Source: Corallochytrium limacisporum Hawaii | Lineage: Eukaryota; Protista; Pluriformea | NCBI GenBank assembly: GCA_002811645.1 | Contig: PDIP01000088.1 | Span: 81,282 to 145,281 of the forward strand | Length of the DNA stretch: 64,000 bases | Direction: 5' to 3' | In this document: piece by piece, positions 54,072 to 54,523 of the stretch | Numbering within the stretch: position 1 is the stretch's first letter | How the letters are laid out: every line of letters starts with the position of its first letter | Program-made: the position numbers and the translations under genes | The notes under the pieces: generated by a model | The model's input: only the letters and a program-made list of their open reading frames with translations | Databases searched by the model: none | Told to the model about the DNA's origin: nothing

Positions 54072-54088
54072 AAAAAAAAAAAAAAAAA
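54072..54088 (-). terminator. Pol III poly-T terminator of the tRNA-Arg gene
   Basis: A17 on the + strand is T17 on the - strand, just downstream of the tRNA 3' end. Confidence 0.75.
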
Positions 54089-54113
54089 GAAGTTCGCTGC
54101 TGAACAGTCAGAG

Positions 54114-54239
54114 AGACCTCGGCGGGATATTCACTTGACTGTAAGCCCGGTGCTGTAAAGCTCCGTGGTTTGGGTCGGTCTTGAACCCACAATCTCCAGA
54201 TCCGTAGTCTGGCGCCTTATCCAATTTGGCCACGAGGCC
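54114..54239 (-). tRNA. tRNA-Arg(ACG) with a 52-nt non-canonical intron at T-loop position 59/60 (exon 1 54239-54180, intron 54179-54128, exon 2 54127-54114)
   Basis: After intron removal it folds into a full cloverleaf: acceptor GGCCTCG/CGAGGTC, D-arm GCC/GGC with G18G19A20, anticodon stem CCAGA/TCTGG with loop CTACGGA, T-stem GTGGG/CCCGC with loop TTCAAGT. BHB motif at the junctions; poly-T terminator about 25 nt downstream. Confidence 0.9.
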
Positions 54240-54405
54240 TGATAAGTCCTGCAGCTCGTAACCTGGTACTTTGAGTACCGGGTTGCGCTTCGCTGAAAGA
54301 GGTGGAGAAAAATAGCAATATATAGTACTGAGTAATGGTTGTCCCGCGTTGCCCCCCATGACAAAATGTATTCAAGATATATATTAGTTTTTCCCTTCCT
54401 CGAAT

Positions 54406-54523
54406 ATCACCGATCAAACCACGTTGAACGCTCCAGGTCCCGTCCGATCCCTGAAGATAAGCAACGTCGGGTCAGGTTAGCCATCGTGGGAGACCAGATG
54501 GGAATTCCTGATGTTGGTGGTCC
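54406..54523 (+). rRNA. 5S rRNA gene (variant lacking 2 nt in loop E)
   Basis: Collinear with eukaryotic 5S (ACCAC..TGAACGC, TCCCGTCCGATC, GAAG.TAAGC, GGTTAG, TGGGAGACC, GGGAAT). Helices I-V pair by compensatory changes. Followed directly by a poly-T run, with TATA-like GATATATATT at about -30. Confidence 0.9.

What the first reader, a model, noticed from the sequence alone, without database searches (positions are those of the whole stretch)
54114..54239. tRNA-Arg(ACG) split in the T-loop by an archaeal-type bulge-helix-bulge intron (position 59/60)
Seen: the minus strand reads ...GTGGG-TTCA-AG^A-CCGAC...GTCAAG-TGAA-TA^T-CCCGC-CGAGGTC. GGG/CCC forms the outer helix. TTCA/TGAA forms a 4-bp central helix flanked by two 3-nt bulges (AGA and TAT) on opposite strands, and C-G plus GAC/GTC close the inner side. 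Cutting after the second nucleotide of each bulge (the BHB rule) removes 52 nt (54179-54128) and restores a canonical T-loop TTCAAGT and a complete cloverleaf with Arg identity elements A20/C35/G36. Established: eukaryotic nuclear tRNA introns normally sit at 37/38 and TSEN cuts them with a ruler mechanism. BHB introns at non-canonical positions are typical of Thermoproteales archaea and a few algae/nucleomorphs such as Cyanidioschyzon. Inference: in an opisthokont-like genome this implies a TSEN with structure-based, ruler-independent recognition, and probably a hidden set of disrupted or permuted tRNAs that standard eukaryotic tRNA scans miss. This is the best candidate for an undescribed system in the window.
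Basis: partly seen in the sequence, partly recalled or inferred. Interest (0 to 1): 0.92.

Follow-up and report, generated by a model that had tools for sequence, protein, structure and literature searches.

The report
Archaeal-style tRNA intron in animal relative
The only arginine tRNA found for CGU/CGC codons in Corallochytrium limacisporum, a single-celled relative of animals, is split in its T-loop by a 52-base intron with an archaeal-style cutting signal, one of nine such genes here, although animal- and fungal-type splicing enzymes are described as cutting only next to the anticodon; splicing is inferred from DNA and still needs RNA proof.

Summary
Observation confirmed. Removing 54179-54128 (52 nt) by the bulge-helix-bulge (BHB) rule restores a full tRNA-Arg(ACG), the only ACG gene found. 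The genome is Corallochytrium limacisporum. A public run holds a 193-nt contig spanning exactly the unspliced precursor with no differences, so the insert is no assembly artefact; no spliced junction was seen. Eight more genes (Cys, Gly-GCC x2, Gly-TCC, Ser-CGA, Leu-CAA, Leu-TAA, Sec) carry unrelated introns at 59/60 in the same strict register. Initiator Met has a 43/44 BHB intron and Ala-CGC is circularly permuted. The scan already noted several of these on other DNA of this genome. TSEN2, TSEN34, TSEN54 (N-terminal extension and Lys41 kept) and RtcB are present; Sen15 was not detected. Canonical introns here are mostly relaxed (2 of 9 strict versus 9 of 9), which suggests a two-mode enzyme rather than loss of the ruler. 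Caveat: the Arg BHB folds about 4 kcal/mol above a rival hairpin. The kind is known from archaea and algae; I found no opisthokont report. In passing: five nuclear tRNAs look 5'-truncated, and the genome has a Thg1-like polymerase.

The parts
54307..54324 (-). Upstream TATA-like Pol III element (TATATA, 6 nt, TTTTTC) shared by nearly all nuclear tRNA and 5S genes of this genome
54240..54294 (-). Predicted 5' leader; start at 54294 inferred from the 12-nt spacing seen at 5S genes
   Evidence: inference; contig of run X1 begins at 54285
54180..54239 (-). 5' exon of tRNA-Arg(ACG), positions 1-59, with A box, A20, anticodon ACG and most of the B box
54182..54185 (-). 5' strand of the BHB central helix (T54-A57, TTCA)
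54179..54181 (-). 5' bulge AG^A; predicted cut between 54180 and 54179
54128..54179 (-). 52-nt intron at position 59/60
   Evidence: present without differences in an independent run
54130..54133 (-). 3' strand of the BHB central helix (TGAA, intronic)
54127..54129 (-). 3' bulge TA^T; predicted cut between 54128 and 54127
54114..54127 (-). 3' exon, positions 60-73 (T-stem and acceptor 3' strands, U73)
54072..54113 (-). 3' trailer and 17-T Pol III terminator (54088-54072)
   Evidence: contig of run X1 ends at 54099 beside the T run
54406..54522 (+). Divergent neighbouring 5S rRNA gene with its own TATA-like element (54378-54393); lacks 2 nt (TA) found in other copies

Best explanation
A working, probably essential tRNA-Arg(ACG) gene with a true intron at 59/60. 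Pol III transcribes it from the upstream TATA-like element to the T run (precursor seen if run X1 is RNA). The precursor forms a BHB in which the invariant T-loop bases 54-57 pair with the intron end (shown by sequence; the fold is inferred). The genome's own TSEN (TSEN2/34/54, with or without an unrecognised Sen15) cuts both bulges using local BHB recognition, a mode that eukaryotic TSEN is reported to retain (inferred). RtcB joins the exons (inferred), then ends are trimmed, CCA is added and A34 becomes inosine (established pathway, not tested). The same enzyme still uses the ruler/A-I-pair mode for the relaxed 37/38 introns. Upstream promoter elements lessen the cost of disturbing the internal B box, which lets ectopic introns and a permuted gene persist (inferred). 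Probability that the intron is really spliced out in vivo, by any enzyme: about 0.93.
For: Exact restoration of the cloverleaf. Nine genes with unrelated introns of 23-57 nt, all in the same register and all with a 4-pair central helix; product of shuffle P values about 1e-19 over eight genes, the two Gly-GCC copies not independent. The central helix co-varies with the exon: TTCA pairs with TGAA in Arg, TTCG with CGAA/CGGA/CGGG elsewhere. No other ACG gene was found by DNA, Rfam or two pattern searches, while CGT plus CGC make up 254 of 554 Arg codons in window ORFs. Every Gly, Cys and Sec gene found has a T-loop intron. Unspliced precursor contig at depth 44 with empty flanks. TSEN34 and TSEN2 align to the human subunits with the catalytic Tyr/His/Lys and partner Arg/Trp positions kept; TSEN54; RtcB. 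Strict central helix in 9/9 T-loop versus 2/9 canonical introns, Fisher P=0.002, with all 9 canonical ones keeping the A-I pair. Literature: eukaryotic enzyme splices archaeal-type BHB pre-tRNAs (PMC4090602; PMC6379350).
Against: No spliced junction in any contig (contigs cannot show short modified tRNAs, so this is weak). The Arg BHB is not the predicted lowest-energy fold. A 2023 review states that the four-subunit TSEN removes introns only at 37/38 (PMC10485636), and the S. pombe enzyme is reported not to cut a minimal BHB at 30 C (PMC8707768). A T-loop BHB destroys the elbow that human TSEN grips (PMC10539383). Sen15 was not found. The genome-wide tRNA inventory is a lower bound.
Confidence: 0.65

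Rival explanations
1. The intron is spliced, but by a remodelled TSEN (for example lacking Sen15, or with loosened contacts to the tRNA body) that has gained broad BHB specificity, convergent with C. merolae.
For: Sen15 not detected (two spurious low-scoring hits), the same three-subunit picture as C. merolae (PMC3978253). TSEN34 residues aligned to human Arg31 and Arg41 are Ala. The TSEN2 GLKYG motif reads GLRMA. The permuted Ala junction lacks an outer helix and Gly-TCC lacks the first inner pair, so relaxed motifs also seem to be cut.
Against: TSEN54 N-terminal extension, Lys41, the long TSEN34 helix region and a basic TSEN2 N-terminus are kept. Canonical introns are relaxed and imply a working ruler mode. 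Sen15 is short and divergent, so a Pfam blank is weak. The substitutions were not compared with other holozoans.
Confidence: 0.25
2. The gene is dead: a chance insertion in a pseudogene, with CGU/CGC read by an undetected gene.
For: Short D- or T-arm insertions in eukaryotic tRNA genes are usually pseudogenes (PMC4090602). The inventory is incomplete (Val-CAC was missed by the Rfam scan; Ile-TAT is still missing). The BHB is not the MFE fold.
Against: Single copy with intact exons, promoter and terminator. Shuffle P=0.0006 for this gene alone. Eight other genes share the register, including all Gly and Cys genes found. Precursor-sized contig.
Confidence: 0.04
3. The intron is removed by another nuclease or a different cut register, or the precursor works unspliced using the mimic T-arm that ARAGORN calls (54239-54165).
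For: ARAGORN and Rfam call a tRNA on the unspliced sequence; a rival hairpin with the intron 5' end is predicted.
Against: The unspliced call has a broken T-stem and a broken acceptor (42 bits). Five of the other genes give no call unspliced. The exact 4-3-3 geometry is the TSEN/EndA signature.
Confidence: 0.05
4. Assembly artefact or contaminating contig (alga or archaeon).
For: None beyond the rarity of such introns.
Against: An independent run carries the same 187 nt without a difference. The genes lie on nine different contigs with one shared promoter motif that also precedes the 5S genes. A window protein and three off-window proteins are in the EukProt set, the latter named Clim_.
Confidence: 0.01

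Closest known systems
[quoted passage not shown]
   Same: Ectopic BHB introns including T-loop introns, multi-intron tRNAs, permuted genes, upstream TATA-like elements, recognisable Sen2/Sen34/Sen54 with no Sen15 found.
   Different: Here an opisthokont. Ectopic introns are concentrated at 59/60 (9 of 10 found) and nearly all strict, rather than scattered and often relaxed. About 11 of 51 genes found are atypically disrupted, a lower share. TFIIIC Tau95 is present, whereas no TFIIIC box-binding homologues were found in C. merolae. Permuted junction at 15/16, not among the four classes listed in PMC3978253.
Archaeal non-canonical BHB tRNA introns (Thermoproteales and others; 59/60 is a listed site, PMC4090602)
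   Same: 4-bp helix flanked by two 3-nt bulges; cuts after the second bulge base; position 59/60.
   Different: Nuclear Pol III gene; enzyme is animal-type TSEN (best matches human TSEN2/34/54 and vertebrate Sen34), not an archaeal EndA; intron bodies are unrelated to one another, unlike the transposed Thermoproteales introns.
Non-canonical introns of cryptophyte nucleomorphs and Chondrus crispus; permuted tRNAs of prasinophytes and chlorarachniophyte nucleomorphs (PMC4090602, PMC13578239)
   Same: Eukaryotic D- and T-arm introns and permuted genes.
   Different: All reported cases are algae or algal remnants; none is an opisthokont in the papers I could search.
Canonical eukaryotic 37/38 tRNA intron cut by TSEN with ruler and A-I pair
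   Same: Same inferred enzymes (TSEN, RtcB); nine such introns examined in this genome.
   Different: Position 59/60; strict BHB; the ruler cannot place these cuts.

Membership tests
BHB-type non-canonical tRNA intron | 4-bp central helix between exon and intron | tested here: met
   TTCA/TGAA, 4 WC pairs; shuffle P=0.0014
BHB-type non-canonical tRNA intron | Two 3-nt bulges on opposite strands with an outer helix | tested here: met
   AGA and TAT; outer helix is the T-stem, 5/5
BHB-type non-canonical tRNA intron | Inner helix h' closing the 5' bulge (strict hBHBh') | tested here: inconclusive
   One C-G pair, 1x2 loop, then 3 pairs; weaker than in Cys, Ser, Leu, Sec
BHB-type non-canonical tRNA intron | Cuts after the second base of each bulge restore a standard tRNA | tested here: met
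   74-nt cloverleaf, 7-nt T-loop, ARAGORN Arg(ACG)
BHB-type non-canonical tRNA intron | BHB is actually adopted by the precursor | tested here: inconclusive
   Formed when the T-arm plus intron is folded alone but 3.7-4.6 kcal/mol above the MFE in the whole precursor; model ignores tertiary contacts, modifications and proteins
BHB-type non-canonical tRNA intron | Spliced product exists in RNA | tested here: inconclusive
   Only the unspliced form seen, in assembled contigs that cannot show mature tRNA
BHB-type non-canonical tRNA intron | Cleavage by EndA/TSEN | not testable with these tools
   Needs in vitro assay
Canonical eukaryotic tRNA intron | Position 37/38 with A-I pair | tested here: not met
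   Anticodon loop is uninterrupted; insert is at 59/60
C. merolae-type disrupted tRNA set | Several ectopic introns, multi-intron genes and permuted genes in one nucleus | tested here: met
   9 T-loop introns, iMet with 37/38 plus 43/44, permuted Ala-CGC
C. merolae-type disrupted tRNA set | Upstream TATA-like element at most tRNA genes | tested here: met
   41 of 43 genes scored by one pattern; tight pattern 25 hits versus 4 in control
C. merolae-type disrupted tRNA set | No TFIIIC box-binding subunits | tested here: not met
   Tau95 E=1e-13; weak B-block candidate in a frame of over 1400 aa
Four-subunit animal/fungal TSEN | Distinct TSEN2, TSEN34 and TSEN54 with eukaryote-specific extensions | tested here: met
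Four-subunit animal/fungal TSEN | TSEN15 subunit | tested here: inconclusive
   PF09631 gave no hit over cut-off; no tool-supplied Sen15 protein was available as a query
tRNA pseudogene | Redundant intact copy and decayed exons or promoter | tested here: not met
   No second ACG gene found; exons, promoter and terminator intact

The most novel reading that the evidence does not exclude
A close relative of animals has remodelled its animal-type TSEN (possibly without Sen15) into a broad BHB-reading enzyme on which translation depends, and this, with upstream promoters and perhaps a 3'-5' polymerase that writes missing 5' ends, supports a whole set of disrupted nuclear tRNAs that arose independently of algae and archaea.
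Probability: 0.25. Interest if true: 0.88.

Novelty: new variant of a known kind. Interest (0 to 1): 0.72.

Why it matters
Recent reviews place non-canonical tRNA introns and permuted genes in archaea and some algae only (PMC13578239), and say the animal/fungal TSEN cuts only at 37/38, so standard eukaryotic tRNA scans are trusted for these groups (PMC10485636). A holozoan whose only Arg(ACG), Gly, Cys and Sec genes found need cuts at 59/60 contradicts that picture. It offers natural substrates to test whether BHB reading is a latent ability of every TSEN or needs a changed enzyme, and it bears on whether ectopic introns are ancestral or arise repeatedly. It also warns that tRNA sets of unicellular opisthokonts may be under-annotated.

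Tried and rejected
Metagenome scan for an Arg(ACG) gene with a T-loop BHB gave 5 hits, all intronless genes or fragments with chance downstream matches; no relative was found, so conservation across species is untested. Four exact matches to the anticodon arm and 14 of 60 T-loop pattern hits were fetched; none gave a credible tRNA (two relaxed-threshold calls without promoter were judged noise). Ile-TAT was not found and Gly-CCC was not seen. Sen15 search was blank. A remembered yeast precedent (long Leu-CAG introns, PMC5951914) turned out to be canonical-position with no BHB mention. Intron transposition between genes: no similarity except between the two Gly-GCC copies. The first null for 3' restoration used a shifted T-stem and was redone. 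The bacterial promoter scan is not informative here. Joined (spliced) sequences were built only inside local scripts from stored files and were not sent to any database search.

Full report
Observation. ARAGORN and Rfam call only a damaged tRNA-Arg(ACG) on the unspliced DNA, with broken T-stem and acceptor, 42 bits. Removing 54179-54128 gives a 74-nt tRNA with T-stem 5/5, acceptor 7/7, T-loop TTCAAGT and a cloverleaf MFE. The junction has an outer helix (the T-stem), bulge TA^T, central helix TTCA/TGAA, bulge AG^A and a weak inner side. Shuffling the intron gives four WC pairs in that register with P=0.0014, or 0.0006 with the first inner pair. No window 110-mer out of 1162 matches the 3' exon's pairing quality. 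Against: folded whole, the precursor prefers a rival hairpin between the T-stem 5' strand and the intron start, 3.7-4.6 kcal/mol lower at 37 C, although the T-arm plus intron alone folds into the BHB.

Organism and context. The assembly is 24.11 Mb in 286 contigs, matching the 24.1 Mb reported for Corallochytrium limacisporum (PMC5560861). Three off-window proteins are exact EukProt entries named Clim_. The gene has an upstream TATATA-N-TTTTTC element (54324-54307) and a 17-T terminator, and sits head to head with a 5S gene. The same element precedes almost all nuclear tRNA and 5S genes. At 5S genes the first base lies 12-13 nt after it, which predicts a start at 54294 for this gene.

Reads. 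Three runs hold parts of the stretch, none on record as RNA. Run X1 has a 193-nt contig covering 54285-54099 with no differences, depth 44 and zero depth on both flanks. That is the predicted primary transcript with the intron in place. It excludes an assembly artefact and suggests transcription if X1 is RNA. No joint was seen, but assembled contigs cannot show a short, modified tRNA. X1 differs from the assembly at 6 places in 307 nt nearby, so it may be another strain with an identical precursor; that contig has depth 5 and this point is weak.

Is the gene needed? A DNA search found one copy. An anticodon-to-T-loop pattern found no other tRNA-like ACG gene, and the four other exact anticodon-arm matches are not tRNAs. 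CGT and CGC are 254 of 554 Arg codons in twelve window ORFs. The inventory is a lower bound: the Rfam scan scored 63 of 584 candidates and missed even an intronless Val-CAC.

The wider set. Rfam rows, promoter patterns and the Sec model gave 51 nuclear tRNA genes. Nine carry an intron at 59/60: Arg-ACG 52 nt, Cys-GCA 23, Gly-TCC 45, Gly-GCC 50 and 49, Ser-CGA 36, Leu-CAA 32, Leu-TAA 57, Sec 56. All have four central pairs in the same register, and the intron strand follows the exon (TGAA for TTCA; CGAA, CGGA or CGGG for TTCG). The bodies are unrelated except for the two Gly-GCC copies. All Gly, Cys and Sec genes found are interrupted, so this route is probably essential. The initiator Met gene has a 31-nt 37/38 intron and a 57-nt 43/44 intron whose outer helix uses the first intron's end, which implies an order of removal. 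Ala-CGC is circularly permuted with a 15/16 junction, a 26-nt spacer and an HBh'-type motif; rejoined locally it is a perfect 72-nt cloverleaf. Earlier notes of this scan on other DNA of this genome report the Ser, Gly, Leu-CAA, iMet, Sec and Ala cases; I found all but Sec independently and checked Sec afterwards.

Machinery. TSEN34 (312 aa), TSEN2 (323 aa) and TSEN54 (504 aa) are present and match the human subunits best. Positions aligned to the catalytic Tyr/His/Lys and to the cross-subunit Arg/Trp are kept. TSEN54 keeps the N-terminal extension and the Lys aligned to human Lys41, which contact the D arm, anticodon stem and 3' splice site (PMC10539383). TSEN34 has Ala at human Arg31 and Arg41, of unknown meaning. 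Sen15 was not detected. RtcB is present. TFIIIC Tau95 is present, with a weak B-block candidate. The intron start rebuilds the B-box consensus in the Arg gene but not in Ser-CGA, Gly-GCC or Leu-CAA.

Mechanism. Nine canonical 37/38 introns all keep the A-I pair, but only two have a four-pair central helix, against nine of nine at 59/60 (P=0.002). This is what a two-mode enzyme would leave: ruler plus A-I pair at 37/38, strict local BHB elsewhere. Eukaryotic TSEN is reported to splice archaeal-type BHB precursors (PMC4090602; PMC6379350), so no new enzyme is strictly required. A remodelled enzyme stays open because Sen15 is unseen, two ectopic motifs are relaxed, and the S. pombe enzyme is reported not to cut a minimal BHB at 30 C (PMC8707768). 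Shown: gene anatomy, recurrence, precursor-sized contig, enzyme genes. Inferred: folding, cutting, ligation, function. Position 59/60 may be favoured because bases 54-57 are nearly invariant, so one intron end fits any tRNA (inference).

Comparison and novelty. The kind is known: archaeal 59/60 introns and the C. merolae set with four T-loop introns, permuted genes and TATA-like upstream elements (PMC3728597; PMC3978253). A 2026 review lists only algal exceptions among eukaryotes (PMC13578239), and a 2023 review says the four-subunit TSEN cuts only at 37/38 (PMC10485636). Eight paper searches found no opisthokont case, though the library lacks most subscription papers. It works like a C. merolae or archaeal BHB intron and meets the sequence-level tests, but differs in lineage, in the single hot spot and in keeping TFIIIC. 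I class it as a new variant of a known kind.

Limits. No relative genome was reachable and the metagenome scan was empty of true hits. Joined sequences were analysed only in local scripts and never sent to a database search.

Verdict. Observation confirmed; interpretation partly supported; about 0.93 that the intron is spliced in vivo; interest 0.72.

Noticed in passing
L037/L097 (His-GTG, C163:17786+), L041 (Ser-AGA, C21:607+), L044 (Thr-CGT, C257:40829+), L071 (Ser-TGA, C11 near 252780-), L081 (Leu-TAA, C238 near 23533+): Five single-copy nuclear tRNA genes have only 9-10 nt between the upstream element and position 1 (5S genes 12-13, all other tRNAs 14-155), so the predicted start lies at tRNA position 3-4, and all five have acceptor mismatches within positions 1-4 (Fisher P about 1e-5). 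The Ser-TGA trailer has no GA or GG to supply by permutation. The genome has a second Thg1-family gene of the TLP type (L094, best match bacterial TLP), and the mitochondrial tRNAs seen have no such 5' mismatches. Suggests 5' ends of nuclear tRNAs written by a 3'-5' polymerase; I found this described only for mitochondrial tRNAs (PMC6471195). May deserve its own follow-up.
   Followed up: partly
L096 / G000:C242:178000-178180 (-): Circularly permuted tRNA-Ala(CGC) with junction at 15/16 and 26-nt spacer.
   Followed up: yes
L054 / G000:C22:166300-166670 (-): Initiator tRNA-Met with nested-order introns at 37/38 and 43/44; invisible to Rfam.
   Followed up: yes
L090:380-610 (G000:C173:7880-8110 +): A second permuted-looking tRNA-like gene with a D-loop insert at 15/16, a 6-bp T-stem and an anticodon loop that I could not resolve (TTC or TCA); unexplained.
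   Followed up: partly
window 54406-54522 (+): Dispersed 5S gene lacking the TA at 54480 that other copies and the reads have; divergent from the tRNA, starts about 112 nt apart.
   Followed up: partly
L081 intron (Leu-TAA): The intron holds a run of six T, normally a Pol III stop; terminators in this genome are mostly longer runs, so read-through is implied.
   Followed up: no
L095 (Arg-TCT, C278 near 92300 -): 133-nt canonical intron, and an A at position 54 of the T-loop; promoter element about 200 nt upstream.
   Followed up: no
genome-wide: No Ile-TAT or Gly-CCC gene found; ATA codons occur (30 of 7917 in window ORFs), so a further hidden gene may exist. Many tRNA leaders and trailers carry GTAC-containing hairpins.
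   Followed up: partly
window 54173-54179 and 54139-54133 (-): The intron start resembles the 3' exon start and its end contains TCAAGT, the mature T-loop sequence, a hint that it arose by local duplication of the T-arm.
   Followed up: no
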